IMG/VR virus record: IMGVR_UViG_3300025098_000012
Span: 62,001-126,000 of that record
DNA: 64,000 nt
Direction: 5' to 3' (one strand)
Shown here: piece after piece, positions 22,101-42,805 of the stretch
Layout of the letters: each line of letters opens with the position of its first letter
Position numbering within the stretch: the first letter of the stretch is position 1
The notes under the pieces: model-generated
Database searches by the model: none
What the model saw: only the letters and a program-made list of their open reading frames with translations
Told to the model about the DNA's origin: nothing
Translations under genes and position numbers: made by a program

Positions 22101-22367
22101 TTACGCTTCTTCCTTTAGAGCATTATCGAGGAACGAGTCTAAAGCACTCTCGATCTCTCCTGCATCATTCACTTGGATGAGGTATCCCCATGATCTCATG
22201 TGGTCATTTCGGTTTACATTCATGTGATAGAGCGTGTTAGGTTGCACCTTATCTAGCTCTCTCTCAGTAAGCATCTCTTGAGACATCACATCAGTTAGTC
22301 TCATGTGGTGTGTCTCGCTATCTGCGTTAGCAAATGCGAGGTAGTCAGTTCGGGTAGGTCGGATCAT
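22101..22367 (-). CDS. Hypothetical protein, paralogue of 42393-42671
   Basis: RPTRTDYLAFA versus KPTKTDYLAYA; REL..V...T; GEIE. Confidence 0.75.
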   Translation of the reverse strand: MIRPTRTDYLAFANADSETHHMRLTDVMSQEMLTERELDKVQPNTLYHMNVNRNDHMRSWGYLIQVNDAGEIESALDSFLDNALKEEA

Positions 22368-22369
22368 TA

Positions 22370-22747
22370 TTATCCTTTCTCCATGTTCTTCATGTTGTTA
22401 ACGATGTCAGCGAAGTTGATTACTCCCTTCGTGTTCTCATTGCGTTCTTCAAGCTCCCGATTCAGTTGTATCAGCATAGCTTCTTCGATCTTGCCTATGA
22501 TCTCATCAGCATGATTGACGATCTCACCAAGAGGTGAAATGCTGAACTGAAAGTCTCCCTCTAGCCATTCGGGAAAGTCCATGTCTCCATCTTGCCAGTG
22601 ATCATATTTGTACTCGTAGAAGTACCGACCTGCTGGTACTAGATCATCGCCTTGAAAGACTTGACCTGTAGTGGTTGATGTTACTCGGAAGCCATCTGGG
22701 TTTCCCCCGATAGCCCACTCGATGATAGATTGTATGTCTTGTCTCAT
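22370..22747 (-). CDS. Hypothetical protein (cassette gene)
   Basis: Motif plus SD AAGGAGA. Confidence 0.75.
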   Translation of the reverse strand: MRQDIQSIIEWAIGGNPDGFRVTSTTTGQVFQGDDLVPAGRYFYEYKYDHWQDGDMDFPEWLEGDFQFSISPLGEIVNHADEIIGKIEEAMLIQLNRELEERNENTKGVINFADIVNNMKNMEKG

Positions 22748-22967
22748 ACATCTCCTTATCTAGTTGTCAAAGAAAGTTAGTGGGTGGTCTCTACCACCCT
22801 CGATACTAGTACATAGATAAGGGGTTACGACTCGCCTGTGGCCTAAACAGCAAACCTCTTAAGAGTTGAGGGATTTCGGGGGTTTAGCTACTCGTAACCC
22901 CTTATCTATAGAACAGTATCGGGGCTGAATGACTCACCCCACCAACCACTCCCCAATGGAGAACAAC

Positions 22968-23228
22968 ATGAACGCACTTTCCCCCCTAACATACGCAGAA
23001 GCCTCACATGGTGTAAGTCAGATAGTAAGCAAGCTCGGTTTCCCACTCTTTATGGGTGAGGCAGAGCGTAAGCCTACTGTCAAGGCTGTACGACAGCAAG
23101 TAGGAGCGTACTACAGCTCTCTTGCTAAAGAGAACAAACTCGACTGTCTCCATGCGTATGACGCAGAGAACAAGGCAGATCTGATCGAGAACGCTGTTGC
23201 CGAGCTTCTTGAGCGAGTCGAGGGCTAA
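22968..23228 (+). CDS. Hypothetical protein (cassette gene)
   Basis: Start re-assigned to the ATG after SD GGAGA. Confidence 0.75.
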   Translation: MNALSPLTYAEASHGVSQIVSKLGFPLFMGEAERKPTVKAVRQQVGAYYSSLAKENKLDCLHAYDAENKADLIENAVAELLERVEG

Positions 23229-23350
23229 GGGAGTCGGGGTCGTAACCCCTTATCTATAGACCTAGTGTGAGAGGCTAGGGGAACAATCAACCAGCAATCA
23301 TATAACATTTACATCAACTGCAAATCACATCTCTTGAAAGGAGAACCATC

Positions 23351-23956
23351 ATGCAGAACATCACAGCAACCAACAACACAAGCATCACTTTCACCACAAC
23401 CAAGAGTGGAAAGGCAGACCTCAAGAAAGACGGTGGTACAGTTCGTGGTCGTCATACAGTACAAGTGGATATGCTTGTGGGTACTGACCACAAGACCATC
23501 GCAGGTCTTGACCTCACTAAAGTCTTAACTGCTGACCGAGCAAAGCTCAAGACAGCTCTTGAGACTCGTGGCTTGGTCTTTACTGACCTCGACTTCACCC
23601 TCGCTCTCGATGGGGATCAGCCTCGCAAGAAGGGTCTGCTCACAGCACTTCGACAGTCAGCTACAGGCACTAACGATGATAACAAGCACTTGGAGGCTTA
23701 CTCTGATCACCCTTGTGGGGTGCGTGGGGTGAGCATCCATGATGGGACAGGTGATGTCCATGTGCGTGGTATCATCATCGGAGAGAAGATCATCTCGGCT
23801 GACCCAAACGGTGATGCGAGAAAGACCAAGAGTGGTCTTCATGTCCAACTCAAGAACGCTATCAGCAAAGAGTTGGATCTTACCACTCGCAAGTGGAGAC
23901 AGTACAAGCTCCCTGCTTCTGCGACCGTAAATGGGGTTGACAACCCTACCCTCTAA
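23351..23956 (+). CDS. Hypothetical protein, paralogue of 21146-21667
   Basis: Motif plus SD AAAGGAGA. Confidence 0.8.
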   Translation: MQNITATNNTSITFTTTKSGKADLKKDGGTVRGRHTVQVDMLVGTDHKTIAGLDLTKVLTADRAKLKTALETRGLVFTDLDFTLALDGDQPRKKGLLTALRQSATGTNDDNKHLEAYSDHPCGVRGVSIHDGTGDVHVRGIIIGEKIISADPNGDARKTKSGLHVQLKNAISKELDLTTRKWRQYKLPASATVNGVDNPTL

Positions 23957-24032
23957 TCCTCATCGGGTGCTTCGCTGTAACCCTTTATTTATAAGTTTAC
24001 ATCAGCCAACCATACCACTAAGGAAAGCAATC

Positions 24033-25268
24033 ATGGCAAAACCAAATCTAAGTAAGACTGTAAGAGAAAACATCCCTTTCATCCTCGGTGGGAATGGGGA
24101 GATGAACAAGAAAGAAATTCGAGATGCGTATGTCGCTCTTGAGGGGTGTTCGTCAGAACACGACTTTGGAACAAATAAGGACACTTGGAGCAAGCTCCGA
24201 TCTGCTATACATGGAGCGTGTCCTAAGCTCGTGAAACAAGGTGTACTCTTTCAACCGAGTAAGGGTAAGTTCGATGTTGTACAGGGTACAGCTATCCCCT
24301 CAGCCTTTGTGCCTTTCCTAAATAGTCAGCCTGTGGTCAAGCCTGTTGAGGTCGCTCCTGTGGTCGAAGCCGAGCCTGTAGTCGAGGTTGAGGAAACCGT
24401 TGAGGTCGCTCCTGTAGAGCCTGTGGTCGAGGTTGAGGAAACCGTTGAGGTTGAGGAAACCGTTGAGGTTGCTCCTATGGTCGAGGTGAGTGTGAGCAAC
24501 CCTGCTGTAATCGAAGCCCATATCGACACCGAGACTCAAGAGCTTGTCGAGAATGTTGGTGGTAGCCGAGATTGGCGAAAGCCTCTTGATGAGGTTGAAG
24601 ATGGGTACATCACTTCAAGCGTACAGGTCAGCACAACAACACTTGAGCCTGTTGCAGAGCCTGTTGCAGAGCCTGTTGCTGAGGTTGCCCCTGTAGAGGT
24701 CGAGGTTGCCCCTGTAGAGCCTGTGGAGGTTCAAGAGGTGGTAGAGCCTACCCCTGTGGTAGAGGACGATGTAGAGGACGATGTAGAAGATCCTGTAGAG
24801 GACGATGATGAGACTCAAGATGAAGATCAACAACCGAGCTATGATCTTAGAGATCTTCGCAAGAGTGCTTCCTTCGATCCTTTGAAGATCACCTTAAAGA
24901 ATGGGGCTACAGGTAGCTATGAGGTGTATCGAGACATGGAAGCACGAATGGTGGTTTTGACTCAAAAAGGTCGTGAGGACTATGTGATGATCCCTGTCGA
25001 TGTGGATCAAGACCGACTTGACGCTCTTAATGAGTTAGATGCTCGTTATGCTCCATACGCTATCAAGTCAGTGGCAGACTTTGACTCAGCACAGCACCAC
25101 AAGGACGGATGTAAGCGTATGGTGACAGCTCTCGTATCCTGTACAAAGAACTGCGACCATACGGATGACTTTGGTGGTCTAGCCGAGTCTTGCCCTAAGC
25201 CTCACGACTGTCCACTAAAGAGCATTTGGGGAGAGGTGGCGATCTATGTCGATCCCCAAGACGCATAA
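24033..25268 (+). CDS. N-terminal winged-helix (Mrr_N-like) protein with long acidic E/V/P repeat linker and Cys-rich C-terminus
   Basis: KLRSAIHGACPKLVKQGVLFQPSKGKF; VEVEET/PVAE/DDVE repeats; four C-terminal Cys. Confidence 0.7.
   Translation: MAKPNLSKTVRENIPFILGGNGEMNKKEIRDAYVALEGCSSEHDFGTNKDTWSKLRSAIHGACPKLVKQGVLFQPSKGKFDVVQGTAIPSAFVPFLNSQPVVKPVEVAPVVEAEPVVEVEETVEVAPVEPVVEVEETVEVEETVEVAPMVEVSVSNPAVIEAHIDTETQELVENVGGSRDWRKPLDEVEDGYITSSVQVSTTTLEPVAEPVAEPVAEVAPVEVEVAPVEPVEVQEVVEPTPVVEDDVEDDVEDPVEDDDETQDEDQQPSYDLRDLRKSASFDPLKITLKNGATGSYEVYRDMEARMVVLTQKGREDYVMIPVDVDQDRLDALNELDARYAPYAIKSVADFDSAQHHKDGCKRMVTALVSCTKNCDHTDDFGGLAESCPKPHDCPLKSIWGEVAIYVDPQDA
24330..24810 (+). repeat. In-frame imperfect tandem repeats (GTTGAGGAAACCGTTGAG; GAGCCTGTTGCA; GTAGAGGACGAT)
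   Basis: Seen directly. Confidence 0.85.
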
Positions 25269-25479
25269 TGAAACCCCTCTCAAGCTGTTAAGTGAAAGCC
25301 GACTAGAGCGAGGATTAAGGGAAATAGCCCCGACACTTAAGAGCTTGAGACTAGATCAAAACATACTCAACTTAAAGTTTAGCCAAATGACAATCATTCT
25401 CCCCCTAACATCAACCATGACTTGGGGGCAACTAACAAACTCCCTACAGGAGAAAGGTCTTACCCATGAGCCTAACTAA
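25246..25479 (+). CDS. Hypothetical protein
   Basis: Overlapping operon member. Confidence 0.5.
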   Translation: MSIPKTHNETPLKLLSESRLERGLREIAPTLKSLRLDQNILNLKFSQMTIILPLTSTMTWGQLTNSLQEKGLTHEPN

Positions 25480-25702
25480 AAGAGAACTGCAAGACTCAAT
25501 CATCATCGTAATCGAGCGAGATGGTACACACCACATCAAAATCCCAAACAATGACAGCCTAGAGTTTGATCGAAAGGCTTATAACGCAATGATGAACACC
25601 ATGACCGTCCTAGACGAACCGAGCTTTGTATTGAGGGCTTTCCTTTGGATCGAACGGAGACTTCAATCTCTTAATGTCATGATCTTTGGAGCGAGTGCTT
25701 GA
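25466..25702 (+). CDS. Hypothetical protein
   Basis: Overlapping operon member. Confidence 0.6.
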   Translation: MSLTKRELQDSIIIVIERDGTHHIKIPNNDSLEFDRKAYNAMMNTMTVLDEPSFVLRAFLWIERRLQSLNVMIFGASA

Positions 25703-26055
25703 TTATGAAAAGATACACACGAAAAGTGAATGGGAAGATTGAGTGGGAGTATCACAAACTCTTACCCGATGAAGATGCTGGAGATTTGATTAGAGGTGCT
25801 TGTTTGGAGATGGGGTTTGTTCCTATTGATTCTGGAATCTACGCATTAAAGACAGACGAGGGGTTCTTAAAGGTTATTTGGCAAGGGGAAGAAAGACATG
25901 GCTGGATAGTAGAAATAAACAACTACTCCGAGATGTTTTTCATCCGCCAAAGTTTGTTCGATACCATAAGGTCGGTATGGTCACATGAGCGTAAAAACCC
26001 TTTAGCTTCACCTCCTATTTTTTCTTCAAAAGAGATCGAAGAAATACTAGGTTAA
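25699..26055 (+). CDS. Member of the IR.VW paralogue family
   Basis: KVNGKIEW...LEMGF...DTIRSVW. Confidence 0.7.
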   Translation: MIMKRYTRKVNGKIEWEYHKLLPDEDAGDLIRGACLEMGFVPIDSGIYALKTDEGFLKVIWQGEERHGWIVEINNYSEMFFIRQSLFDTIRSVWSHERKNPLASPPIFSSKEIEEILG

Positions 26056-26061
26056 GATTTT

Positions 26062-26508
26062 TTAAAGTTTATCATCGAGCCAAGAGAGATCCAGCGTCCA
26101 ATTATGTTTGGATCTCTCATTCCATTGCTCAAAGACTTGAACGATGTAGTCCTCAGTCTCTTGAGGTGTGAGGCTATTGACGGAGGCAAGTTTGTGTAGT
26201 ACCTGCGATTGAACTTGGGGCGACTCTACTGAGAGGGTTCGCCCGATGTGTTTGACCTTGTGGCAGGTAGGGCAGAGAGAAATCAGACCTTTGAGAGTTT
26301 GGGTCTTGGTCTGATCGTCATAATCCCATATCTCGTGGCACTCAACAGGCCACTTAGACCCTTTGCCTCCACAGACTTCGCATTTGTACCCTGCTTGCTT
26401 GTAAGAGGCTTTGCGTAACTTATCCCATTGGGGTTTAGAGAGGTTAGCTTCAGAGCGTAGGTTATTGCCCCATGATGATTGTGGTACGAGTTCAATCGAG
26501 AGCTTCAT
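26062..26508 (-). CDS. HNH endonuclease
   Basis: CEVCG...ECHE.W.YD...LCPTCHKVKH. Confidence 0.85.
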   Translation of the reverse strand: MKLSIELVPQSSWGNNLRSEANLSKPQWDKLRKASYKQAGYKCEVCGGKGSKWPVECHEIWDYDDQTKTQTLKGLISLCPTCHKVKHIGRTLSVESPQVQSQVLHKLASVNSLTPQETEDYIVQVFEQWNERSKHNWTLDLSWLDDKL

Positions 26509-27254
26509 TTTTCACACCTTGCGTATTGAGTTGATCTTAGTTGAACCCCTGCTTTTTTAAGTCTCCGAGCAATCGTGGCATAACTGACCTTATATTTTTC
26601 AGCCAACTGTACGGTGGATAAACCCGACTCATATTCTTTAATCATTTGATCAAGAGGTAATTTAAACTTCTCCCTACCAGATTCTCTTAGTCGAACCCCT
26701 GCTTTTTTAAGTTTCCTGTTAATCGTGGTGAAGCTGACCTTATATTTTTCAGCTAACTGTACGGTGGATAAACCCGACTCATATTCTTTGATCATTTGAT
26801 CAAGGGGTAAGTTTAACTTCTCCCTACCTGCATCCCTCAAAGAATACCCTGCTTTCTTAAATCTCCTATGTAAAGCGGATGGGTACACACCATACTTTTC
26901 AGATAAGTCATATAAATTCAGTCCCGACTCATATTCTTTAATTATTTGATCAAGGGGTAGATTTAATCTTTTCCCACAAGGTCTTATTCCCACTCCTGCA
27001 CCTCTGAGTAGACGAGTAACTGTAGTAGCTGACACCTTGTATTTATTAGCTACTTGATAAGTAGTTAAACCAGAATGATAATCTGCAATCACATCTTGTA
27101 TTGGCAGGAGAATTCTTTTGCCTCTTAACTGAACTCCAGCTTTCTTTAATCTGTCAAGAATCGTAGTTGTGCTAACTCCATATCTTGAGGCTAGATCTTT
27201 GGTAGACATACCAGTGTTGTATTCGGTGATGATTTCATCTACAGGTAGCTTCAT
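26505..27254 (-). CDS. Protein with five tandem ~50-aa HTH repeats
   Basis: Repeats of LP.D..I.EY.SG.S...LA.KY.VS..TI...LKKAGV.LR. Confidence 0.85.
   Translation of the reverse strand: MKLPVDEIITEYNTGMSTKDLASRYGVSTTTILDRLKKAGVQLRGKRILLPIQDVIADYHSGLTTYQVANKYKVSATTVTRLLRGAGVGIRPCGKRLNLPLDQIIKEYESGLNLYDLSEKYGVYPSALHRRFKKAGYSLRDAGREKLNLPLDQMIKEYESGLSTVQLAEKYKVSFTTINRKLKKAGVRLRESGREKFKLPLDQMIKEYESGLSTVQLAEKYKVSYATIARRLKKAGVQLRSTQYARCEK
26543..26827 (-). repeat. Near-identical 150-bp-period duplication encoding the last two HTH repeats
   Basis: 26543-26677 versus 26693-26827. Confidence 0.85.
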
Positions 27255-27643
27255 TTTTTCTTCTCCCTTAATGCGAGCAATGTTTTTGTGAGTTCACCAG
27301 CCTCATCTTCTCTCCCTTGATTTCTATCTGGATGGCAGAACATGAGTAATCGTTTAACAAGAACTTGATCTAACCTGGGCTTGTTTTGAGCTTGATAGCG
27401 TAAGCTAGAAATCTCCATCTTAAGCTGATGAACTTGAGCGTGGAGGGTCTTGATCTGATTATCTAAGTGTTGGGTGTCTGGTGTTTCTTGTAAGAGCTGA
27501 TGGATGACTTTTTGTAGCCCGTCATATCGGTCGTCAGACTTGATCCTCTTATATCCTTGGGATTCTCTCCAGCAAGTCCAACAGAGGGCATAGTGGCTAT
27601 CTTCCATAGGCCAGTTGCATTCACTACATATTTGAACATCCAT
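27251..27643 (-). CDS. Zn-finger / coiled-coil / J-domain-like (HPD) protein
   Basis: CSEC..LCWTC; KRLLMFCHPDRNQG. Confidence 0.7.
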   Translation of the reverse strand: MDVQICSECNWPMEDSHYALCWTCWRESQGYKRIKSDDRYDGLQKVIHQLLQETPDTQHLDNQIKTLHAQVHQLKMEISSLRYQAQNKPRLDQVLVKRLLMFCHPDRNQGREDEAGELTKTLLALREKKK

Positions 27644-27702
27644 TTTTAATACTTTCTTTATGTCTCTCTTAATACAGATCATTTATATGAAAGGCATAAA
27701 CA

Positions 27703-28440
27703 ATGTATGACAAGATCGCTTATCTAAGATTAAGAATTGCTCGCCTTGAGCGACTTGCTGACTTAAGACCAGGTCTTGGTACAAAAGACCCCTGCTACAT
27801 TATTCAGAGAGCAGTTAACAATAGGGCTGACATCCCCAAAACTAGGTATGTCAAAGATGTGTTGGAGGATCTTGACCTCGTCACATACGGAGCTTCTGGT
27901 CGTAGTGGGTTAGAAGACATTCCTAGTAGAGATAGGGATGATTGGTATGGTCTGACTTACCCTCGCAGATTGAAGGAGAGAGTAGAGGGCGAGGAGATTA
28001 CATACGGAAAAGGTGGGAAAAAAAAGCTACCTGTCAACATTCCACATCTCACTTATTCTCAACACGCTCAGTTTAGAATGGATCTGAGAGGAGTGACTGT
28101 GGAACAAGTAGAAGCTGTTGTGAAGCACTGGCATACACAGCAGAAAAGAGTAGTAGAAGGTATGCGAGATTATGACCGACTAAAAGAAATCTCCATGAAA
28201 AATAAAGATGAGCATGATTTAATCAGAGATAACTTGAACTGGTTGAAGAACACACTGCAACCCGATGAGATCGAAAAGATGAAGAACGATATGAGAAGGC
28301 TTAATCGAGAGATGGAGATCAACCATAAATATATGGGTGTCTTCGTAGGGTTTGTTCCTCAGAAAGATGGGAGTATAGACATCAAGACCGTCTTTGATCT
28401 TAAGAAATCAGATCAGCCCTACAGAGGTTATAACTGCTAA
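27703..28440 (+). CDS. RIARLE-leader protein with DUF4258-like (toxin RNase-like) motif
   Basis: N-terminal LRIARLERLA; YSQHAQFRMDLRGVTVEQV. Confidence 0.6.
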   Translation: MYDKIAYLRLRIARLERLADLRPGLGTKDPCYIIQRAVNNRADIPKTRYVKDVLEDLDLVTYGASGRSGLEDIPSRDRDDWYGLTYPRRLKERVEGEEITYGKGGKKKLPVNIPHLTYSQHAQFRMDLRGVTVEQVEAVVKHWHTQQKRVVEGMRDYDRLKEISMKNKDEHDLIRDNLNWLKNTLQPDEIEKMKNDMRRLNREMEINHKYMGVFVGFVPQKDGSIDIKTVFDLKKSDQPYRGYNC

Positions 28441-28445
28441 GACAT

Positions 28446-28781
28446 CTACTCTGAGAGCTTCATCTTTTGGAAGAACTTTCGGGACTCCTCTAAGAAGTAC
28501 GAGATAAACTCAAGGTTGGTGATGTTTCTTTTGTACCTTGAACTATCTGACTTATATTTGTACTCAAAAAAGATGACATTATCCTCTGAAAAGAGTTGGG
28601 TGCTGAACTTATCATCTTTTGTATGTGTCCACACCTCTTTTCGATCAGTGGCTTGGAAGCCACATTCTACTACGAGTATTTTGAAGATGGATTCCCTATT
28701 AAGTTCTTCTGTCTGCGAAGTTGTGAGGTCTGGATTAGCAATCCTCACTCCGTTTTGTTTAACTGTCAGCATCGGGTTCAT
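28446..28781 (-). CDS. Member of the NG.R / GF paralogue family
   Basis: MLTVKQNGVRIANP nearly identical to the N-terminus of 46840; VECGF. Confidence 0.7.
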   Translation of the reverse strand: MNPMLTVKQNGVRIANPDLTTSQTEELNRESIFKILVVECGFQATDRKEVWTHTKDDKFSTQLFSEDNVIFFEYKYKSDSSRYKRNITNLEFISYFLEESRKFFQKMKLSE

Positions 28782-29475
28782 CTTTCATATAGATGGCAAC
28801 CCGATCAATAGCACAGCTAAAGACCCTCGCTGTAGACTCGTTGAACTCACCTGTTAACAGAAGATCGAGGACTTGACCTTTCCATACTAGAGGGTTGTTG
28901 CTTGTTAAGTTTACGATATATCTCAAAGCCGTTTGGATTTTCCCCCTTGAGTTTTCATGTTCGGGGTTGATTGAAAGAAGGGCATCCATCAATCGAACTA
29001 CATACTTTGAACTGATAGGGTTAGCTACCTTCTCTCTTATATCTTTCTCATCAAGGATTTGCTTGAGTATGTTAGGAGTATGGGTTGTGCAGTTGAGCTT
29101 ACGACCCGATTGATAGTAAGCGTTGACTGCCTCTATCTTGTCCTCGTCTGAGATCTTATCGACCTTACGCTTATAGGTTTTGCGTGTAGTAGGGTTCTCT
29201 AAGCGTACCTTCAAGGTTTGACCCGACACACCGTACTTTCGAGCAAGATCTTCGATCAGACCATTAGCGTCTGCTTCTTTGATCTCTTCAATAGGGATCG
29301 GGAGCAAGAGGTGCTGATAGCTTGTTCCTTTGATCTTAGGTGTTCCTTGTCGTAAAGTCTTTACAACCACGACTGGATGTTCGTTGTACTGCTGACCGAT
29401 CTCTTCTGGCGTCTTCCCCTCTTGCATGAGGTTATGCCACTCCACTCTCATCTCTGACTTGGCTTTCATGTTCAT
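28759..29475 (-). CDS. Multi-HTH DNA-binding protein
   Basis: EGKTPEEIGQQYNE; IEDLARKYGVSGQTLKVRL. Confidence 0.65.
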   Translation of the reverse strand: MNMKAKSEMRVEWHNLMQEGKTPEEIGQQYNEHPVVVVKTLRQGTPKIKGTSYQHLLLPIPIEEIKEADANGLIEDLARKYGVSGQTLKVRLENPTTRKTYKRKVDKISDEDKIEAVNAYYQSGRKLNCTTHTPNILKQILDEKDIREKVANPISSKYVVRLMDALLSINPEHENSRGKIQTALRYIVNLTSNNPLVWKGQVLDLLLTGEFNESTARVFSCAIDRVAIYMKDEPDADS

Positions 29476-32769: not shown

Positions 32770-32822
32770 AGGGTTCTCCTTGTCGAAGTGGTTGCGTTGA
32801 TGTAGTTCTCATAAATAAGGGG

Positions 32823-32864
32823 TTACGGTTCAGAGCCTCGCTCCATGACCTTATACAATCTCAT
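32823..32864 (-). CDS. 13-aa mini-ORF MRLYKVMERGSEP between two motif copies
   Basis: GAGGGAG before the ATG; stop is the TAA of the next motif. Confidence 0.4.
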   Translation of the reverse strand: MRLYKVMERGSEP

Positions 32865-33055
32865 GAGGAAATGCTCCCTCACACTAGGATATAAATAAGG
32901 GGTTACACTATATACACATACGAATGATAGGATCTCCAACAAGAAGCGTAAGTACTTGATTACCTAGCAAAAAGCCTAAAGTGTAACCCCTTATCTATAG
33001 AGTAGTGTAGGGCGATCAAGCCTACCAACCAATCACTCCCACTAAGGAGAACAAA

Positions 33056-35410: not shown

Positions 35411-35755
35411 ATGGCTAACATCCGTACCCTCATCAAGTCAGCCCTCCAATCTGACCTTTCTGGTGTGCGTGTCAAAGAACTCGCCCTCAGCATCGGTGCA
35501 ACTTACTCTGCCACTTACCAAGCTCTCCAATCCATGATGTCTGAGGGGCAAGTCGATAAGGTTGCTCGTGGTGTCTTCGCCCTTTCAGAGATCCCGAAGT
35601 TCACTACAGCCGAGTGCATCTCCCTTCTTCAGTCTTTGGAGAACCAAGAGATCGCTGTTGAGATCGCTCGTGAGGAACTTGATCGGGCAGAGGCACAGCT
35701 TCGAGCTGTGAAGCGTACCATCAAGTCTACCATGATGTCTGCGTTCGAGGACTAA
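35411..35755 (+). CDS. Winged-helix plus coiled-coil protein
   Basis: VKELALSIGATYSATYQALQSMMSEGQVDKVARGVF. Confidence 0.75.
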   Translation: MANIRTLIKSALQSDLSGVRVKELALSIGATYSATYQALQSMMSEGQVDKVARGVFALSEIPKFTTAECISLLQSLENQEIAVEIAREELDRAEAQLRAVKRTIKSTMMSAFED

Positions 35756-35812
35756 GTAACCCGAAATCTATCTGACCCCATCACCGAACCCACTCCCACA
35801 GGAGAACCAAAC

Positions 35813-36046
35813 ATGGAAACACTGAACCTAACCCGAACCACACCTCTTGGCGACCACCTCAATCGTAATAAGGAAGAGGGCTTGCCCTTCAAAGTCTATG
35901 CCTATAAGGACTTGGTGTCTGTCGAAACAACACTACCTTTTGATAGGAATAGGACGGTCATCGACATCTACAACGCTGACGGTACGAAGATCACAAGGGA
36001 ATCAACCATGAAGCACATCCTACACACTCTTATTCGGGAAGGCTAA
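35813..36046 (+). CDS. Hypothetical protein
   Basis: SD AGGAGA; degenerate motif upstream. Confidence 0.7.
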   Translation: METLNLTRTTPLGDHLNRNKEEGLPFKVYAYKDLVSVETTLPFDRNRTVIDIYNADGTKITRESTMKHILHTLIREG

Positions 36047-36138
36047 TCCACCCCTCCCCCACAGGAGAACAAACTACCAAGATGAAATTGAAGCTAAGGC
36101 TCAACAGTAATCGACCTCTGCCCTTAGAGGCAGTCGAT

Positions 36139-36197
36139 AGGAACAGACGATTGGTGTTGTTCTGATGTGATGGAGGGTTCGACTCCCTCATGTTCCT
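36139..36197 (+). ncRNA. tRNA-like element (acceptor stem plus T arm, no proper anticodon arm)
   Basis: AGGAACA...TGTTCCT pairing; GAGGG-TTCGACT-CCCTC T arm. Confidence 0.45.
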
Positions 36198-36294
36198 TTA
36201 TAGATTTCTAACTTGTGGCCCGAAGCTGTAACCCCTTATTTATAACTTAGTATCGGGGCAATGAAGCCCACTCACTCTGACAAGGAGAACCAAC

Positions 36295-36819
36295 ATGAAC
36301 AGCGTAAACATCACAGCCGACAACTTTCTCTCAGCACTCCTCGCCCCTTTCGGTGGCAAGGACACCCACAGCGAGTCGGGAGAGCCTCTCCCAAGCTCAA
36401 CTTCAAAGGCATGGACTTTCACGCTCCATAACACAGAGCGTGACACTCACCTCACCTTCAAGTCTCGCCGCCCGAAGGGGTGGACGGTCGATAGCCCCGT
36501 CTTGATCGACCTCATGGTCGGTACGGACAACAGCTCTGACTTCGGATTCATCGGGAGCGTTAGCTCTCGTGGGTTCTACAAGGCATCACCTAAGAGCAAG
36601 GTGGACGCTGACCGTAAGGCTGTCGCTGATCGTACCCTCGTGTGGCTTCTAACCAAGCTCAACAATGGACAGGAGCTTCCCGAAGCTCTTGAGATGAAGG
36701 GTGCTTCTAAGTGCTGTCGCTGTGCAAGGAAGCTCACCAACCCCGACTCGGTAAATGATGGGATGGGTCCTATCTGTCGCAAGAAGGCTAACGACAGCAA
36801 GGTTAGTCGAGGGGCTTAA
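36295..36819 (+). CDS. DUF6011-like Zn-ribbon protein
   Basis: CCRCARKLTNPDSVNDGMGPIC. Confidence 0.8.
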   Translation: MNSVNITADNFLSALLAPFGGKDTHSESGEPLPSSTSKAWTFTLHNTERDTHLTFKSRRPKGWTVDSPVLIDLMVGTDNSSDFGFIGSVSSRGFYKASPKSKVDADRKAVADRTLVWLLTKLNNGQELPEALEMKGASKCCRCARKLTNPDSVNDGMGPICRKKANDSKVSRGA

Positions 36820-36991
36820 GGTCTAGGGTGGGTCGGAGCTGAAAAGCTCTTAGAAGAGCATTTAAGAGCTTAATGGAAAAAGGAATAACGACTATGTTTT
36901 CGGGGGTTTGGAGTTCGTAACCCCTTATTTATAGAGTAGTGTAAGGGGAACAATCCCCACCAACCAATCACTCCAACAAGGAGAACAAGAC

Positions 36992-37294
36992 ATGATCGAC
37001 TTAACCAACTACCCAATGCTCAACAAGCGTCAGAACACCCCCTTCTTCGCAGACCTCACCAATGAGGATCGTGTGATGAATGTCAACGGAAGCCCCATGA
37101 GCTTGGGTGTGTGGAACATGATCGTGAGCTACCGAGATCTCAAGCTCTGGTGTCGGCTCGGCATGAAGCCCCATCGTGGGTGGAAGGTGAGCCACGCTAA
37201 GGCTTACTTCGGCATCAAGGGCAACAAGGACAAGCTCTTGAGCGAGTTTGAAGCACTCAAAGCTGAGGTCGATGAGATCCTCGGACGAGGCTAA
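36992..37294 (+). CDS. Hypothetical protein (cassette gene)
   Basis: Full leader plus SD. Confidence 0.8.
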   Translation: MIDLTNYPMLNKRQNTPFFADLTNEDRVMNVNGSPMSLGVWNMIVSYRDLKLWCRLGMKPHRGWKVSHAKAYFGIKGNKDKLLSEFEALKAEVDEILGRG

Positions 37295-37375
37295 CAATCG
37301 GGAGGCGTAACCCCTTATCTATACCATAGTGTAAGAGGGATTGACCCTCACCAACTACTCAAGGAGAAAAAAAGA

Positions 37376-37696
37376 ATGGCTACCTACATCAACAAAGAGA
37401 TCGCAGGCTTCGCTTCTACCCTCATCATCGACATCGCAGAGACTATGGAGGGCCTCTGTCTTTGGGCTAAGATCAAGGGAGGGAAGATCAATGAGGATCG
37501 CACCTCTTATGAGGAGATCACTGTCGAGGACATGGAGGAGGGCATCACCAAGACCCTCACGATCCGAGACATCGAGCTTGCAACGAACAAGCTCTCCCTT
37601 CGTGAGATCAAGGCTCTCCGAGCAGGTGACTTTGATTGGCTCATGGCTGACAAGGTGCTTCAGCTCGCATTTCACCGCAAGGTGATCTACGGATAA
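37376..37696 (+). CDS. Hypothetical protein (cassette gene)
   Basis: Full leader plus SD; C-terminal AD.VLQ.A....VIYG. Confidence 0.8.
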   Translation: MATYINKEIAGFASTLIIDIAETMEGLCLWAKIKGGKINEDRTSYEEITVEDMEEGITKTLTIRDIELATNKLSLREIKALRAGDFDWLMADKVLQLAFHRKVIYG

Positions 37697-37889
37697 GAGA
37701 GGTCGGACTGAGGTAATGTAAGAGGGGAGCAATCCTTGAGCGTAAGGTTAAGAGGGGCAACTTAATCCAGAAGCTAGACATCTAGGGGTGGCGAGGTCTG
37801 AGCGTTATAGTGGGATAAGTCGTAACCCCTTATCTATAAGATTGTAAGAGGAACGATCCTCTTAGACTACACTCCAGAAAGGGAGAACA

Positions 37890-38486
37890 ATGCCAAAGGC
37901 ACACAACATCTTCTTAGCGTCCGTCCTCGTGATCATGGGGTTCGGCATCAACGCAGGTAAAAACGCTTTTGAGGGCAGGGCTGTTTACCACAGTTCTTGT
38001 TCGATCAGTTCTAATCCTGTGCAGTATCAGCATCATACAGGCACGATAAGCGTGAGGAGATGGTGGTATGTGGACACGACCACAGGAGCTAAGATCAAGG
38101 CAACTAAGGCACAACATGAGGCTTGTGAGAGCGTGAAAGTTCTCATGTCGAGTGAGGCTGAAGTTGCTGAATCTGAGAGGCTTGAAGATGTCGCCAATAA
38201 CTGGATCATCTTCTCGTTCGCTTGGTTTGGTCTTGGGTTCTTGGTTGAGTTCGCCACCACCTACCTTGCTAAGAGGCGAGAGCGTCTTGAGTGGGAGAGA
38301 GCTGACCGAGAGCGAGAGCTTGAGTGGAAGCGAGACTGTGAGATGTGGGAAGCGAAGCGAGAAGATGAGAAAGCCGAGAGGCAGAGGTCTAAGACAGCGA
38401 ATGAAGAACGAGCAAGACGAAAGGCTGAGAGGGGAGCAATCCTTGAGGCTAGAAGGCTTGCGAACTTAGAGCGTAAGAAAGGATAA
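37890..38486 (+). CDS. Membrane protein with charged C-terminal coil
   Basis: Two hydrophobic segments; E/R-rich tail. Confidence 0.75.
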   Translation: MPKAHNIFLASVLVIMGFGINAGKNAFEGRAVYHSSCSISSNPVQYQHHTGTISVRRWWYVDTTTGAKIKATKAQHEACESVKVLMSSEAEVAESERLEDVANNWIIFSFAWFGLGFLVEFATTYLAKRRERLEWERADRERELEWKRDCEMWEAKREDEKAERQRSKTANEERARRKAERGAILEARRLANLERKKG

Positions 38487-38490
38487 CGAG

Positions 38491-39054
38491 ATGACTTTAA
38501 GAGAGCAGATACAACAGAGAGCAGAGATGATAGGTCAGCTAGGTGGTCGAGGCGACCTTATGACGCAAGAGCAGTATGTACTCGATAAGGGTACTCAGAT
38601 GGCTTCTACTGAGCCTTTAACAGATGAGCAGTACGCTTACCTCAGAATGATCACAGGAGCGATTGAGTGCCTTCCTAAGCAGTGTTTCTACAATGCTCAG
38701 ATGATGACACTTACGGACAGCTATCATGAGACACAGAGGGTCAAGTACCACGAGGGCTATGTGTGGACGGGGATCATGCCGATCCTTCATGGTTGGATCA
38801 CTCTTGACGGTAAGATAGTGGATGTAACACTCAGCACCGATCCACAGTCAACGCAACGCTTCTTTGATGGAGAGCCACCACGAGAGGACTTGATGGACAG
38901 GGTGTTAGGAGTGATCCCCGATGAGTGGGAGTATATCGGTGTGCCGATGGAGGGTGAGTATGTGGTGAGCTTCATGCTAGAGAAAATGGAGTCTCGATCC
39001 CTCATCGACAACTGGCAAGACGGATGGCCTCTGTTGAGACAGAGTGATGGTTAG
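38491..39054 (+). CDS. Transglutaminase/papain-like fold protein
   Basis: QCFYNA...EGY...HGW...IVDVT (putative C-H-D triad). Confidence 0.6.
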   Translation: MTLREQIQQRAEMIGQLGGRGDLMTQEQYVLDKGTQMASTEPLTDEQYAYLRMITGAIECLPKQCFYNAQMMTLTDSYHETQRVKYHEGYVWTGIMPILHGWITLDGKIVDVTLSTDPQSTQRFFDGEPPREDLMDRVLGVIPDEWEYIGVPMEGEYVVSFMLEKMESRSLIDNWQDGWPLLRQSDG

Positions 39055-39470
39055 CCTTTAAGTTGAGAGAGTACCTCTAGCTCTAGGATGCGAGGGTCAT
39101 CACTTGCTTCGATGGTGAGTGTGTCATCCCCCCGACTAGTCGTGATCTCCCCTTTGCGATTGATGTAAGTCTCAGTAGGTCGAGTGATCTTTGCCTTGAA
39201 GAGTTCGACACCCATCTCTTCTTTAAAGGACTTTACAAGAGCCTTGATGATGTCGGTGTCCTCCACACCTGCTGAGGAGATGCGATACTCAACAGTCTTA
39301 GTGATGAGAGGAGCGATGCCATGATCTCGGTCATCGCCCCAATATGATTTGTGGTATCCGATGGTCATGCCCTTGAGTTCCGTAGCGACAGCCACGAGGT
39401 TGTCGAAGGACGAGTTATAGTCGGTGCAAGAGTGGTTTGCGATTTTGACAGCTCGGTTGATTGCTTCCAT
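39051..39470 (-). CDS. Hypothetical protein, paralogue of 39645-40046
   Basis: GYHKSYWGDD..APL..LF...ITRPT..RKG..TT.RG..TL.I. Confidence 0.8.
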   Translation of the reverse strand: MEAINRAVKIANHSCTDYNSSFDNLVAVATELKGMTIGYHKSYWGDDRDHGIAPLITKTVEYRISSAGVEDTDIIKALVKSFKEEMGVELFKAKITRPTETYINRKGEITTSRGDDTLTIEASDDPRILELEVLSQLKG

Positions 39471-39559
39471 GTGTTCTCCTTTAGAACTTGTTGGTGATGC
39501 TCCTCTTTAAGTAAGGGGTTACATTAGCCCGTCCTTAGCTCCATAAAGAGGAGGAGGGT

Positions 39560-39584
39560 TAAATAGGAAGTGAGTTCCTATTTA
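39560..39584. repeat. 25-bp palindromic site TAAATAGGAA-GTGAG-TTCCTATTTA, copy 1
   Basis: 10-bp inverted arms, 5-bp asymmetric core; identical to 40142-40166. Confidence 0.95.
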
Positions 39585-39644
39585 GGGTTGTAACCCCCTA
39601 TTTATGAGGGTGCATCAACCACTCACTCCCAATGGAGACAAAAC

Positions 39645-40046
39645 ATGATCGACATCATCCTTAACAACGCACTCAAGAGCTTCGAGACTTACGATGAAAC
39701 CTTCAAGCGAGTGATCCCAACAGCCCATGCCGAGATCGAGAATATGAGCTATGGTTATCACAAGTCTTTCTTCGGAGATGACACCGATGTGAACGCTCCC
39801 CTCGTTCAGCGTACAGGAACATATAACCTCGTCTGCGACCCGAAGGATCACGAGGCTATCGTAGAAACTATCGCAGAGGAGTTCGCTAAGGTGGAGTCCT
39901 GTGTCAAGCTCTTCGGCATCGAGATCAGCCGACCAACTAGAACCAAGTGGGTCGCTCGTAAAGGGAAGGCCACCACTCGCAAGGGAACTACCACCCTCAA
40001 CATCACTTGGAGCGAGGACAGTCGCATCACGACTTGGAAGCTCTGA
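39645..40046 (+). CDS. Hypothetical protein, paralogue of 39051-39470
   Basis: GYHKSFFGDD..APL..LF...ISRPT..RKG..TT.KG..TL.I. Confidence 0.8.
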   Translation: MIDIILNNALKSFETYDETFKRVIPTAHAEIENMSYGYHKSFFGDDTDVNAPLVQRTGTYNLVCDPKDHEAIVETIAEEFAKVESCVKLFGIEISRPTRTKWVARKGKATTRKGTTTLNITWSEDSRITTWKL

Positions 40047-40141
40047 GATAGCTCTTAGAGAGTAGTTCGAGTCGTAGCCTTTGCCCTCACCCACCTTGAG
40101 AGGCTTAAGGCTCTTAGAGAGCAATCCGAAGCGTCTAGTTC

Positions 40142-40166
40142 TAAATAGGAAGTGAGTTCCTATTTA
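40142..40166. repeat. 25-bp palindromic site, copy 2 (direct repeat)
   Basis: Identical to 39560-39584; contains the TAG stop of 40160-40438. Confidence 0.95.
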
Positions 40167-40438
40167 ACCATGACAAGGTTATACGCAAACTTGAGCCAAT
40201 CCTCAGCGTAGTTGCCTCCTTGCCACATAAGGAGTTGCACCGAGTTTTCAAACTCTCGCCATTCAGCAAGGGTCTTATTGTTAGTGTTCATCCAGCGAGA
40301 TCTCAAGTCTCGGTAATGACCTCGTGCAAGATCTTCCCACATAGGAAGCCAACTTGACCGATCCGTCCTAGAATTACGAAGCAACTGTATAAGGTCTATG
40401 GTCGTCATTTCTCTAGTCATTTTCATGTCCTTGTTCAT
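40160..40438 (-). CDS. Hypothetical Trp-rich protein
   Basis: TCATATAA upstream. Confidence 0.6.
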   Translation of the reverse strand: MNKDMKMTREMTTIDLIQLLRNSRTDRSSWLPMWEDLARGHYRDLRSRWMNTNNKTLAEWREFENSVQLLMWQGGNYAEDWLKFAYNLVMVK

Positions 40439-40606
40439 ATAACTTGAGTACCTATTTATTATATGATTTGGAGACTGAAAATGACTTCTCTGATGAGAAG
40501 TTATCGAGGGTTTGACTCGTTCTTAAAATGGCAAATATGGGTAGGGTTTCTAGCTAGTCTATGTTAGTGATACAGCAAGCGAACTGGATCAAACACTACC
40601 GACACC

Positions 40607-41080
40607 TCATCGAACCTTAGCCAGCTCCCTATCGCAGATCTCATTCGACCTCTTCTCGAAGATGGGGCAGTTGTCCATCATGTAGCTATATGCGTCTTGC
40701 TGAAGGTCAATCCCCTTAACCGATCTAGTGTCCTTGAGGCAGGTGATGAGATAAAGCAGACGACCACTAGGAGGGTTGGGGAAAGCCCACTCCATCACTT
40801 GATCCTCCGTCATCTTAGACACGACCTCATTAAGCCAAGACTTATCTGAGTCGGTGAGAGCGAAGTCCTGTGGCTTACGGTTGAAAGCCCACCACAGCCT
40901 CATCTCCATGTGGTTGCTGATGACTCCATGCTTCTTGTAGTATGCCCTAGCGATCTTCACATCATTCTCGACAACATGGTCGATGTCCGATTGGCTGAGG
41001 GTCGGGAGGCGAGGGTTATCATTCTCTCGCTCATGGGTCTGACGGATGTGCTTGCGATACTGACTTAAGAGATTTTCCAT
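40607..41080 (-). CDS. Hypothetical protein
   Basis: SD AAAGGA; 5' hairpin leader. Confidence 0.75.
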   Translation of the reverse strand: MENLLSQYRKHIRQTHERENDNPRLPTLSQSDIDHVVENDVKIARAYYKKHGVISNHMEMRLWWAFNRKPQDFALTDSDKSWLNEVVSKMTEDQVMEWAFPNPPSGRLLYLITCLKDTRSVKGIDLQQDAYSYMMDNCPIFEKRSNEICDRELAKVR

Positions 41081-41195
41081 TGTTCGTCCTTTGCGGAGTT
41101 GGTTCGGAAGGTGAGGGTCTGATTGTCTGCCCTCTATCTAGTCAACACAGGGGCTGTCCTTTTCTTTTCAGCACATCACTTTTTGATTAAACTTT

Positions 41196-41804
41196 TTACC
41201 CACGAGGGAGCATACCCTCCCTTGAGTCAAAGTTATACTCCTCGATGATCTTGTTGATCCTCTCAAGCTGAGTAGCTACCCACTCTTGATTGCCCCCACC
41301 TTTAGTGTCGTAGTGGTGGTCGAGGAGGTGGAGATTTTGGTCAATGCTGAACAGCTCCGAACTGAGCCTCCAGTTCGCATCATCGTAGTCCTTGACGACC
41401 TGTGGTGGCAAGATCTCAACCTCCCACGCTTGATCTCTGAGGAGGTCATTAAGCTCATCCTCTCGCTCGTCCTCATCTAAGGTGGGGTCGAGCGATGCCT
41501 TAGCCGCCTCCTCATCAAACCACTCCCGATTGATGTCCCAAGGGTACACACCTTCCATGACGCAGTGGTCGCAAAGCTCCTCGTCATGGTCGTACTCGTC
41601 ATATCCGACACAGTATGATGCCATGTATCGTCCTGCCCCATTACACTCAGTGCAGACCTTAGCCTCAGCGTAGCGAGATGCTTGGAGTTTAGCCTTAGCC
41701 TCCTCTAGCTTCGCCTTGAGGGTGGGGAGGGCCTTGATCTCGCTCTCGATTTGAGCGATGAGGACTCGCTCGGAAGTTTTGATGTCTTGTAGTGATGGCA
41801 TCAT
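41196..41804 (-). CDS. Coiled-coil plus DnaJ-type Zn-finger protein
   Basis: CTECNGAG...CDHC; start re-assigned after GGAGA. Confidence 0.75.
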   Translation of the reverse strand: MMPSLQDIKTSERVLIAQIESEIKALPTLKAKLEEAKAKLQASRYAEAKVCTECNGAGRYMASYCVGYDEYDHDEELCDHCVMEGVYPWDINREWFDEEAAKASLDPTLDEDEREDELNDLLRDQAWEVEILPPQVVKDYDDANWRLSSELFSIDQNLHLLDHHYDTKGGGNQEWVATQLERINKIIEEYNFDSREGMLPRG

Positions 41805-41884
41805 ATTGATGTCTCCATTAGGAGTGAGTGAGGTGCGTGATGATTCTGCACCTCTTACATAAGGATATAGATAAGGGGTTACGC

Positions 41885-42067
41885 TCACGCTTGCTTGAGG
41901 AGCGTCTTAGCCTCCTCTGCCTTGTCAGCGTCAACCTTGATATGGACGATCTGATTTGCAGGCACAGGGTGGAAGCTAGGGTTCAAGTGGGTTATGACAG
42001 CCATGATGTCATAGAGCTGATACATGGTTGAGGTGTCGGGTAAGGACGCTACGGTGGTTCGGGTCAT
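41885..42067 (-). CDS. Hypothetical protein
   Basis: SD AGGAGG. Confidence 0.7.
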   Translation of the reverse strand: MTRTTVASLPDTSTMYQLYDIMAVITHLNPSFHPVPANQIVHIKVDADKAEEAKTLLKQA

Positions 42068-42076
42068 GTGTGCCTC

Positions 42077-42355
42077 CTAGTGGTGGTAAGGGTTCATGGG
42101 AGTGCCAGGCTCAAAGCCTGTGATCAGCCACTCTCGGATTTGGACTGACCAATCCTTGAGTGCATCTTGAGCGACAGCTCCCTCAGCCCATGCAGTGAGC
42201 ATGGCGATGGCTTGAGGAGCAGGGGTGTCCACCGTTAGTGTGGTGGACACATGAACGAACATGGAGGGTGATCGAGTGAGGGTGGTCTTACCCTCAACCT
42301 CGTTGACCTCAACTGAGATCGAACCCATTGGTCTTTGATGTGTGATGGTTGTCAT
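42077..42355 (-). CDS. Hypothetical protein
   Basis: SD AAGGAGA; C-terminal REWLITG. Confidence 0.75.
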   Translation of the reverse strand: MTTITHQRPMGSISVEVNEVEGKTTLTRSPSMFVHVSTTLTVDTPAPQAIAMLTAWAEGAVAQDALKDWSVQIREWLITGFEPGTPMNPYHH

Positions 42356-42392
42356 GTTGGTTCTCCTTAGTGGTTGATACAAGGTTATCTGT

Positions 42393-42671
42393 TTAAGGGG
42401 TTACGAAGTGCTTGCTACTGCACTCGATCTCCCCTGTCTCACCGTTGATGCTGATCCCGATGTCCTCCTCTTTATCACCGTTGCGATCTAGGATGTTGAG
42501 TTGGAGGGGGGTGTCTACAGGCACATTGCGAAGCTCTCGTCCTTCCCATCCGTCTGTGGCGAAGTCGAGGATGTTCCCATTCTCATCGTACTCGCAAGCA
42601 CAGATCTCAACTTGATGGTTTCGAGAGTAGCCTGCATAGGCGAGGTAGTCTGTTTTAGTAGGTTTACGCAT
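42393..42671 (-). CDS. Hypothetical protein, paralogue of 22101-22367
   Basis: Shared motifs; last codons V-T-P-stop are encoded by the motif. Confidence 0.75.
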   Translation of the reverse strand: MRKPTKTDYLAYAGYSRNHQVEICACEYDENGNILDFATDGWEGRELRNVPVDTPLQLNILDRNGDKEEDIGISINGETGEIECSSKHFVTP

Positions 42672-42805
42672 AAGCATAAGTCCTTTCATAGTTGTCAAAG
42701 AGTTAGTAGGGCAACCACTGTCGCCCTCGATACTGTTCAATAAATAAGGGGTTACGCCAACCTGTAACCCCTTATTTATTACAAAGCATCAACCAAGGAG
42801 AACCT

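What the first reader, a model, noticed from the sequence alone, without database searches (positions are those of the whole stretch)
22101..42755. Same leader, different first gene: a possible footprint of cassette insertion
Seen: leaders at about 22760-22828 and 42689-42755 share TAGTTGTCAAAGA..GTTAGT.GGG..CCCTCGATACT plus the motif. At 42.7 kb the leader drives the PT.TDYLA protein directly. At 22.8 kb an unrelated gene (22370-22747) sits between the leader and that protein's paralogue (22101-22367).
Basis: partly seen in the sequence, partly recalled or inferred. Interest (0 to 1): 0.65.

Follow-up and report, generated by a model that had tools for sequence, protein, structure and literature searches.

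The report
Shuffled promoter-leader gene modules, huge phage
Two small genes of a huge uncultured marine phage share a special upstream control segment because they are old duplicates, and sister phages show that genes at these two spots are repeatedly lost, flipped or reshuffled at a repeated promoter-like signal, much as already described for T4-type phages.

Summary
The window lies in a 226.7-kb record of an uncultured marine phage whose complete relatives are 360-375 kb. A 16-nt motif (GTAACCCCTTATYTAT) precedes dozens of small ORFan genes, always co-oriented, usually followed by a hairpin. The leaders at 22.8 and 42.7 kb are each other's best match by a wide margin. They are the only two members in this record of a discrete leader class: hairpin with an AGNG loop plus a TCTTTGAMA box. 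The 88-aa and 94-aa proteins are real paralogues; the 125-aa gene between leader and paralogue is unrelated.

The insertion reading is partly supported. In relatives the 22.8-kb locus exists in four states: both genes, either gene alone, or only a leader stub. The genes are therefore separable cassettes. The two-gene state is the widespread one, and the variants look like deletions from it, so an insertion would be old and its direction is unproven. The leader class also precedes three other gene families, so it is not tied to the paralogues.

The 42.7-kb module is inverted in this phage relative to four relatives, with crossovers inside inverted motif copies. Homology breakpoints cluster at motifs. 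This is a variant of PeSL-type modular shuffling known from T4-type phages.

The parts
22813..22828 (-). 16-nt promoter-like motif of the 22.8-kb unit
   Evidence: Exact motif copy. One of 47 copies in the record, all co-oriented with the next gene.
22782..22799 (-). Leader hairpin: 7-bp stem, AGAG loop
   Evidence: Folded (MFE -12.9). Covariation shown. The stem sequence is conserved in six P0002 leaders.
22761..22781 (-). Spacer plus TCTTTGACAACTA box
   Evidence: The box is kept in all P0002 leaders, including the one whose protein is only 52% identical.
22370..22747 (-). P0002, 125-aa ORFan, first gene behind the leader
   Evidence: No Pfam or PHROG family. Unrelated to the paralogue family. 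Homologues always sit at this locus.
22101..22367 (-). P0001, 88-aa member of the PT.TDYLA family. Its ribosome-binding site lies in the last codons of P0002.
22089..22104 (-). Next motif copy. Its first bases form the stop of P0001. It is also the left end of the 668-bp segment missing in relative G001.
22894..22909 (+). Divergent motif copy driving the 86-aa gene at 22968-23228, which has an ordinary leader
42740..42755 (-). Motif of the 42.7-kb unit. It stands back to back with the copy at 42764-42779, with an 8-nt spacer.
42709..42726 (-). Leader hairpin: 7-bp stem, AGTG loop
   Evidence: (MFE -14.3).
42689..42708 (-). Spacer plus TCTTTGACAACTA box
42393..42677 (-). P0003, 94-aa PT.TDYLA protein directly behind the leader. 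Its last codons and stop lie in a variant motif copy (42389-42404).
   Evidence: AlphaFold model with pLDDT 90.6.
42764..42779 (+). Motif driving the 49-aa gene at 42806-42955. One crossover point of the inversion.
42077..42355 (-). 92-aa gene now downstream of P0003. In relatives it is on the other arm of the junction.

Best explanation
The window comes from a huge uncultured marine phage. In it, small early-type ORFan genes are organised as modules: a 16-nt promoter-like motif, a 5' leader that usually has a hairpin at a fixed distance, a ribosome-binding site and the gene.

The leaders at 22.8 and 42.7 kb belong to a discrete, selectively conserved subclass. Its features are a hairpin with an AGNG loop, a CTAAC spacer and a UCUUUGAMA box just upstream of the ribosome-binding site.

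The two units most likely descend from one duplicated module of promoter, leader and PT.TDYLA gene. At 22.8 kb an unrelated gene, P0002, now lies between the leader and the paralogue and is translationally coupled to it. That arrangement is old: it is shared by all sampled lineages that keep the locus intact.

Since then the locus has lost P0002, P0001 or both in different lineages. The 42.7-kb module was flipped in this phage by recombination between inverted motif copies.

Shown: the anatomy, the paralogy, the discrete leader class, the four locus states, the inversion and the clustering of breakpoints at motifs. Inferred: that the motif is a promoter, that the hairpin and box act in the RNA, that the duplication carried leader and gene together, and that P0002 arrived by insertion.
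For: Motif:
- 29 copies in the window against 0.5 expected; 47 in the record and 70 in the complete relative G001.
- All copies point towards the next start codon.

Hairpin:
- It starts 12-13 nt after the motif; 59 of 103 copies fold at -6 kcal/mol or lower.
- The stems covary.

Discrete leader class:
- A covariance model without the motif finds only the two sites in the window. In the whole of G001 it finds three sites plus a decayed stub, and no ordinary leader.
- For P0002 units, leader DNA is better conserved than coding DNA: 76-89% against 68-79%.

Paralogy; the two clades each have 100/100 support.

Locus states:
- Both genes present.
- Paralogue alone, in L142.
- P0002 alone, in L147-149.
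- Stub only, in G001.

Inversion:
- P0003 lies on the right-hand arm in G001, KOPF15, ZHAN22 and a JGI contig, and on the left arm only here.
- The motif types flanking it are exchanged as a crossover inside the motifs predicts.

Breakpoints: 17 of 154 homology breakpoints between this record and G001 lie within 25 nt of a motif, against 2.0 expected and a maximum of 7 in 1000 trials.
Against: - No transcript data exist, so neither promoter function nor the RNA role of the hairpin and box is shown.
- No sigma-70-type consensus sits at the motif. No phage RNA polymerase or sigma factor was detected, so what reads the motif is unknown.
- The leader class also precedes three other gene families, and leaders are exchanged between modules. 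The link between leader and paralogue could therefore be secondary.
- No relative shows an unambiguous pre-insertion state. L142 lacks the box and keeps a stretch identical to the 3' end of P0002 in a TARA contig, which fits a deletion as well.
- The tree inside the P0001 clade is unresolved.
- HSP ends may stop at motifs partly because motifs are the best-conserved intergenic bases.
Confidence: 0.6

Rival explanations
1. Shared regulation or leader exchange, not shared descent of the units. The box-class leader is a portable regulatory element that spreads between modules by recombination or gene conversion. Its presence before both paralogue-containing units reflects co-regulation or chance exchange, so it is not a footprint of an insertion.
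For: The class precedes five gene families in all: P0002, P0003, a 70-aa gene, an 84-aa gene and an 87/93-aa gene. The 84-aa gene of a TARA contig is a paralogue of the window's 86-aa gene, yet it carries a hairpin of the P0003 type, while its neighbour keeps the ordinary leader. For 9 of 33 first-gene pairs matched between this record and G001 (some of the matches spurious), the best-matching leader is not the partner's own. Two adjacent G001 modules have near-identical leaders.
Against: Each leader subtype has stayed with its own gene across lineages: six P0002 leaders cluster together and four P0003 leaders cluster together. In this record the only two class members coincide with the only two family members, about 0.001 by chance on my estimate. 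In G001 the 70-aa gene shares its first codons with P0003, which points to duplication of leader plus gene start rather than of the leader alone.
Confidence: 0.25
2. Reverse polarity. The ancestral unit was leader, P0002, PT.TDYLA gene. The 42.7-kb copy arose by duplication followed by loss of the P0002-like gene, so the footprint is of a deletion at 42.7 kb and not of an insertion at 22.8 kb.
For: Deletion of P0002 alone plausibly happened in L142. Deletions dominate the observed changes at this locus.
Against: None of the P0003-type genes in five lineages has a P0002-like neighbour or remnant. The same is true of a distant family member that sits behind an ordinary sigma-70-like promoter. 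P0002 homologues were found only at the 22.8-kb locus.
Confidence: 0.12
3. Chance resemblance between two copies of a common repeat.
For: All leaders share the motif and often a hairpin, so some similarity is expected.
Against: The two leaders are reciprocal best matches with nearly twice the score of any other partner. The 13-mer is unique to them. The covariance model finds no ordinary leader. The class is conserved in relatives.
Confidence: 0.02

Closest known systems
PeSLs (promoter-early stem-loops) of T4-type phages (Arbiol et al. 2010, PMC2839356; Comeau et al. 2014, PMC4122927)
   Same: Both are repeated intergenic cassettes of a promoter plus a G-tract/C-tract stem-loop. Both are concentrated in hyperplastic regions, sit in front of ORFans and end in a ribosome-binding site and start codon. 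In both, insertions, deletions and replacements between sister genomes fall at the cassettes (compared).
   Different: The motif here is a 16-nt phage-family-specific word, not a sigma-70 -35/-10 pair. The stem-loop sits at one fixed place downstream of the motif and has no U-tract, so it looks like a 5' leader hairpin rather than a terminator. Only 18 of 117 copies have an upstream G-run that could make the motif itself part of a terminator-like hairpin. The phage is 360-375 kb, uncultured and marine, with no detectable Gp23-type capsid gene. An inversion between inverted copies is seen here. Mini-circles could not be tested.
Morons of lambdoid and other phages (own knowledge)
   Same: Both are single genes with their own promoter, added between existing genes.
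   Different: Morons are heterogeneous and usually carry their own terminator. Here all modules share one motif, and the exchange points lie in that motif.
Integron gene cassettes (own knowledge)
   Same: Both are arrays of small genes bounded by repeated sites and varying in content between relatives.
   Different: No integrase or attC-like site is needed or seen here. Each module has its own promoter-like motif. Exchange is most simply explained by general homologous recombination; the phage encodes a UvsX/RecA-like recombinase at 57699-58988.
Translational operators of phage early mRNAs, such as T4 RegA or gene 32 targets (own knowledge)
   Same: Both are a short conserved unpaired sequence just upstream of the ribosome-binding site, shared by a small set of genes.
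   Different: No binding protein is known here and no sequence likeness to those operators was tested. This is only an analogy for how the box might act.

Membership tests
PeSL-type regulatory cassettes | Repeated intergenic motif holding a sigma-70-like early promoter | tested here: not met
   The consensus scan finds no sigma-70-type site at the motif copies in 21500-23500. The motif consensus is (T/C)GTAACCCCTTAT(C/T)TATA. Promoter function is inferred only from orientation and position.
PeSL-type regulatory cassettes | Stem-loop with G-rich and C-rich arms, joined to the promoter | tested here: met
   59 of 103 copies fold at -6 kcal/mol or lower, starting 12-13 nt after the motif. Compensatory changes occur in 4 of 7 pairs.
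PeSL-type regulatory cassettes | Stem-loop acts as a terminator or attenuator | not testable with these tools
   No U-tract follows the leader hairpin. A terminator-like hairpin that includes the motif is possible in 18 of 117 copies. Function needs experiments.
PeSL-type regulatory cassettes | Enriched in variable regions, in front of ORFans | tested here: met
   27 of the 47 copies in the record lie in window 20.7-46.8 kb. The proteins tested have no Pfam or PHROG family.
PeSL-type regulatory cassettes | Indels and replacements between sister genomes fall at the cassettes | tested here: met
   17 of 154 breakpoints lie within 25 nt of a motif against 2.0 expected. Examples are a deletion ending at the motif at 22104, an inversion between inverted copies and a module order swap at 36.2-37.3 kb.
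PeSL-type regulatory cassettes | Host phage belongs to the T4-type myoviruses | tested here: inconclusive
   A UvsX-like recombinase and a clamp-like protein are present. No Gp23 match was found, but the controls for that search did not ring either. The nearest record is an uncultured 485-kb phage at 51% identity.
PeSL-type regulatory cassettes | Excised mini-circles | not testable with these tools
   This needs PCR or read-level data from a phage stock.
PT.TDYLA protein family (unnamed) | About 90 aa with an N-terminal P-T-x-x-D-Y-x-A-x-A and a C-terminal G-x-I-E block | tested here: met
   P0001 and P0003 align over their full length. 12 representatives among 1.84 billion proteins reach E 0.001 or better. 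The 87/93-aa neighbours match only weakly (E 0.0056 and 3.8e-4) and are not counted as members.
Known RNA families (Rfam 15) | Match to a curated covariance model | tested here: not met
   No match up to E 1 in 20000-47000.

The most novel reading that the evidence does not exclude
The box-class leader is a new cis-regulatory RNA element: a 5' hairpin with an AGNG loop plus a UCUUUGAMA box next to the ribosome-binding site. A phage protein would read it, possibly one of the proteins encoded behind it. It would travel as a portable control cassette that places newly captured genes under one common post-transcriptional switch.
Probability: 0.2. Interest if true: 0.7.

Novelty: new variant of a known kind. 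Interest (0 to 1): 0.5.

Why it matters
Huge phages carry hundreds of small genes of unknown function, and how these are gained, lost and wired into the expression programme is poorly known. Here one 16-nt word marks the modules, and sister genomes from metagenomes catch deletion, inversion, order swap and duplication at that word. This extends the PeSL idea beyond cultured T4-type phages to a very different, uncultured group.

The result also gives a practical handle. The motif delimits expression units and predicts where genomes of this group will differ. The small, sharply conserved leader class is a defined candidate for a regulatory RNA element that can be tested with simple reporters.

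Tried and rejected
- Near-identical DNA in the phage collection: no match.
- RNA sequencing runs holding the locus: none was listed.
- Rfam: no match. A sigma-70 promoter scan found nothing at the motifs.
- Phage RNA polymerase (T7-like, or the beta-subunit domain) and sigma-70 region 2: no match in the record or in the complete relative. For the T7-like family and for Gp23 the control genomes did not ring either, so those two blanks carry little weight.
- Pfam and PHROGs gave no family for P0001, P0002, P0003 and their neighbours.
- The P0003 model is confident (pLDDT 90.6), but Foldseek found nothing at E 0.001 or better in the PDB or BFVD.
- The profile search also hit fibronectin-type-III-rich giant proteins. 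I treat these as weak and unexplained.
- I considered the 87/93-aa neighbours of P0003 as a third paralogue group. They share an N-terminal P-[ST]-K-A-D..A.A pattern, but the statistics are too weak.
- I considered that the box pairs with the ribosome-binding site to mask it. This appears in only 3 of 8 minimum-energy folds and not in the consensus fold, so it stays a possibility only.
- I considered that the end of P0002 (ATGAAAGGA in some lineages) is the old ribosome-binding segment of the leader. The ATG part occurs only in one subclade with a variable 9-nt repeat, and only AAAGGATAA is general. The argument is therefore weak.
- The tree of P0001-type proteins could not order the locus states.
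Full report
**What the window is.** The window is bases 62001-126000 of a 226,698-bp IMG/VR virus record, estimated 73% complete. A sister record, G001, is 375,691 bp and rated complete. A third relative is a 360,751-bp ENA contig, KOPF15. Further relatives come from TARA and other marine metagenomes.

The phage encodes a UvsX/RecA-like recombinase and a clamp-like protein. Its nearest deposited phage record is an uncultured 485-kb phage at 51% protein identity. No near-identical DNA exists in the phage collection.

**The repeated motif.** The word GTAACCCCTTATYTAT occurs 29 times in the window with up to 3 mismatches, against 0.5 expected. It occurs 47 times in the record and 70 times in G001.

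Every copy points towards the next start codon, 25-95 nt away. At divergent junctions two copies stand back to back. The extended consensus adds a pyrimidine before the motif, an A after it, and a weak T.GT.T about 20-25 nt from the motif start.

In 59 of 103 copies a hairpin of -6 kcal/mol or stronger starts 12-13 nt after the motif, with a G-rich 5' arm and a C-rich 3' arm of freely varying sequence. A CA-rich spacer and a strong ribosome-binding site follow it. The other copies have short leaders without a hairpin.

A more distant relative, ZHAN22, uses a changed word (GTGACCCC...) in the same places. No sigma-70 consensus, Rfam family, phage RNA polymerase or sigma factor was found. I read the motif as a promoter-like signal from position and orientation only.

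**The observation.** They are reciprocal best matches among 41 leaders (score 42, next best 22 and 25). The 13-mer TCTTTGACAACTA occurs only at these two places in the record.

A covariance model built from 14 such leaders of several genomes, with the motif left out, finds only these two sites in the window. In the whole of G001 it finds three intact sites and one decayed stub, and no ordinary leader up to E 1. The class is therefore discrete.

Its hairpin loop is always A-G-N-G, and 4 of 7 stem pairs show compensatory double changes. For P0002 units compared across lineages, leader DNA is 76-89% identical while the coding DNA is 68-79% identical. The leader is therefore under its own constraint.

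**The proteins.**
- P0001 (88 aa) and P0003 (94 aa) are paralogues: BLASTP E 9e-7 over the full length and hhalign E 2.6e-5 over 76 columns.
- An HMM of both groups finds no third member in the record. The two groups form clades with 100/100 support.
- A profile search of 1.84 billion representatives finds 12 proteins at E 0.001 or better. Among them are two longer proteins that carry the domain at their N-terminus.
- The AlphaFold model is confident (pLDDT 90.6) but has no structural neighbour.
- P0002 (125 aa) is unrelated and has no family.

**The 22.8-kb locus in relatives.** Four states exist.

- **State A: leader, P0002, P0001.** This is found here and in an identical second assembly, in KOPF15, in TARA contigs and in LARK/HEVR contigs. 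It is also found in L146, in L150/L151 and in a Logan contig. In these, P0002 identity falls to about 60% and P0001-type identity to about 40%.
- **State B: same motif and hairpin, then a P0001-type gene directly.** This is contig L142. It has no P0002 and no box.
- **State C: stub only.** In G001 and its near-twin G003, only the motif, a decayed hairpin and a decayed box remain. The next motif follows 13 nt after the aligned part of the stub. Window bases 22104-22772 have no counterpart.
- **State D: leader and a P0002 homologue, then the next conserved gene.** This is L147-149. No P0001-type gene is present.

The flanking 99-aa gene of L142 is 91-92% identical to those of TARA and G001 but 78% identical to this record's. 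The four main lineages are otherwise about equally distant. States B and C thus sit next to state-A lineages and are most simply deletions.

L142 also keeps 24 nt identical to the junction between the P0002 stop and the P0001 start in TARA. This fits a deletion with one end just after the hairpin. Because the P0001-type gene of L142 is itself very divergent (49-58%), import from a distant lineage cannot be excluded.

**The 42.7-kb locus in relatives.** In G001, KOPF15, ZHAN22 and a JGI contig, the P0003 gene lies on the right-hand arm of a divergent junction, upstream of the 49-aa gene. Only here is it on the left arm, upstream of the 92-aa gene.

In the relatives a variant motif follows the P0003 stop and drives the 49-aa gene. 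Here the same variant still follows P0003 but drives the 92-aa gene, while the 49-aa gene has a standard motif. An inversion with crossovers inside two inverted motif copies predicts exactly this pattern.

G001 has two more modules at this junction, a 70-aa and an 87-aa gene, both with box-class leaders. The 70-aa gene shares its first codons with P0003. The 87-aa gene and its leader recur in ZHAN22.

**Leaders and genes do not always travel together.**
- A TARA contig has an extra 84-aa paralogue of the window's 86-aa gene. It carries a box-class leader with a P0003-type hairpin, while the orthologue beside it keeps the ordinary leader.
- For 24 of 33 first-gene pairs matched between this record and G001 (some of the matches spurious), the best-matching leader is the partner's own. 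For the other 9 it is not.
- Two adjacent modules at 36.2-37.3 kb are in the opposite order in G001.
- Homology breakpoints between the two genomes fall within 25 nt of a motif 17 times out of 154, against 2.0 expected. In the motif-rich region the count is 10 of 31 against 2.0. Part of this may arise because motifs are the best-conserved intergenic bases.

**Reading.** The only two box-class leaders of the record stand before the only two family members. My estimate of the chance is about 0.001. The simplest account is a duplicated module of promoter, leader and gene, with P0002 now lying between leader and paralogue in one copy.

Two facts favour arrival of P0002 over its loss at 42.7 kb. 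P0003-type genes never have a P0002 neighbour, and a distant family member stands alone behind an ordinary promoter. Neither fact proves it.

The event predates all sampled lineages. What is directly documented is later loss and inversion. The mechanism that fits all the changes is general recombination between the many copies of the motif and leader, as proposed for PeSLs in T4-type phages. One change does not fit neatly: the internal ends of the deletions in G001 and L142 lie inside the leader and not in a motif.

**Function of the leader (inferred).** The hairpin would lie near the 5' end of the mRNA, where such structures commonly protect transcripts. This is general knowledge and was not tested here. 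The box lies next to the ribosome-binding site and is conserved beyond neutral expectation, so a role as a binding site for a regulator, or in masking the ribosome-binding site, is plausible. The masking fold is seen in only 3 of 8 predictions.

**Limits.** No transcript data exist. Many contigs are short. Trees of 90-aa proteins are weak. Several blanks rest on family searches whose controls did not ring.

Noticed in passing
window 36228-37323: Two adjacent motif-led modules, a 174-aa and a 100-aa gene, are in the opposite order in relative G001 (349991-351026). Their leaders differ between the orthologues. In G001 the two leaders are nearly identical to each other, which suggests leader homogenisation.
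   Followed up: partly
record G000 185696-225487 (outside the window): A block of about 40 kb is inverted relative to G001 (108838-71813). Its ends were not examined.
   Followed up: no
window 23236-23257, and 18 of 117 motif copies in G000 and G001: A G-run (GGGGT or GGGGC) lies within 30 nt upstream of the motif (mostly 6-16 nt) and can pair with its ACCCC, giving a terminator-like hairpin followed by the T-rich half of the motif. Its frequency is about four times that in random 30-nt windows.
   Followed up: partly
window 42389-42404; G001 336094, 357595, 265158, 215438: A variant motif (GTAACCCCTTAA..ATAAC) is followed by hairpin-free leaders. It may be a second promoter class.
   Followed up: no
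locus L138 3219-3416 (ZHAN22 contig): A more distant relative uses a changed motif word (GTGACCCC.TATATAT) at the same positions while keeping the box-class leaders. The motif evolves with the phage lineage.
   Followed up: no
window 22370-22400 and the same place in L128, L131, L144: The 3' end of P0002 holds one to three copies of a 9-nt unit, read as N-M-K, and the number varies between lineages. The last codons (K-G-stop) double as the ribosome-binding site of P0001 and are kept even where P0001 is absent.
   Followed up: partly
window 9149-18262, minus strand: A 3037-aa ORF has no Pfam match at E 0.001.
   Followed up: no
window 32811-32906, minus strand: Two motif copies stand in tandem 80 nt apart upstream of one 379-aa gene. 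The first has a hairpin and the second does not. The same arrangement is found in G001.
   Followed up: no
proteins P0029 (167 aa) and P0032 (260 aa): The PT.TDYLA domain also occurs as the N-terminal part of longer proteins from other metagenomes. The profile also touches fibronectin-type-III regions of giant proteins, which is unexplained.
   Followed up: partly
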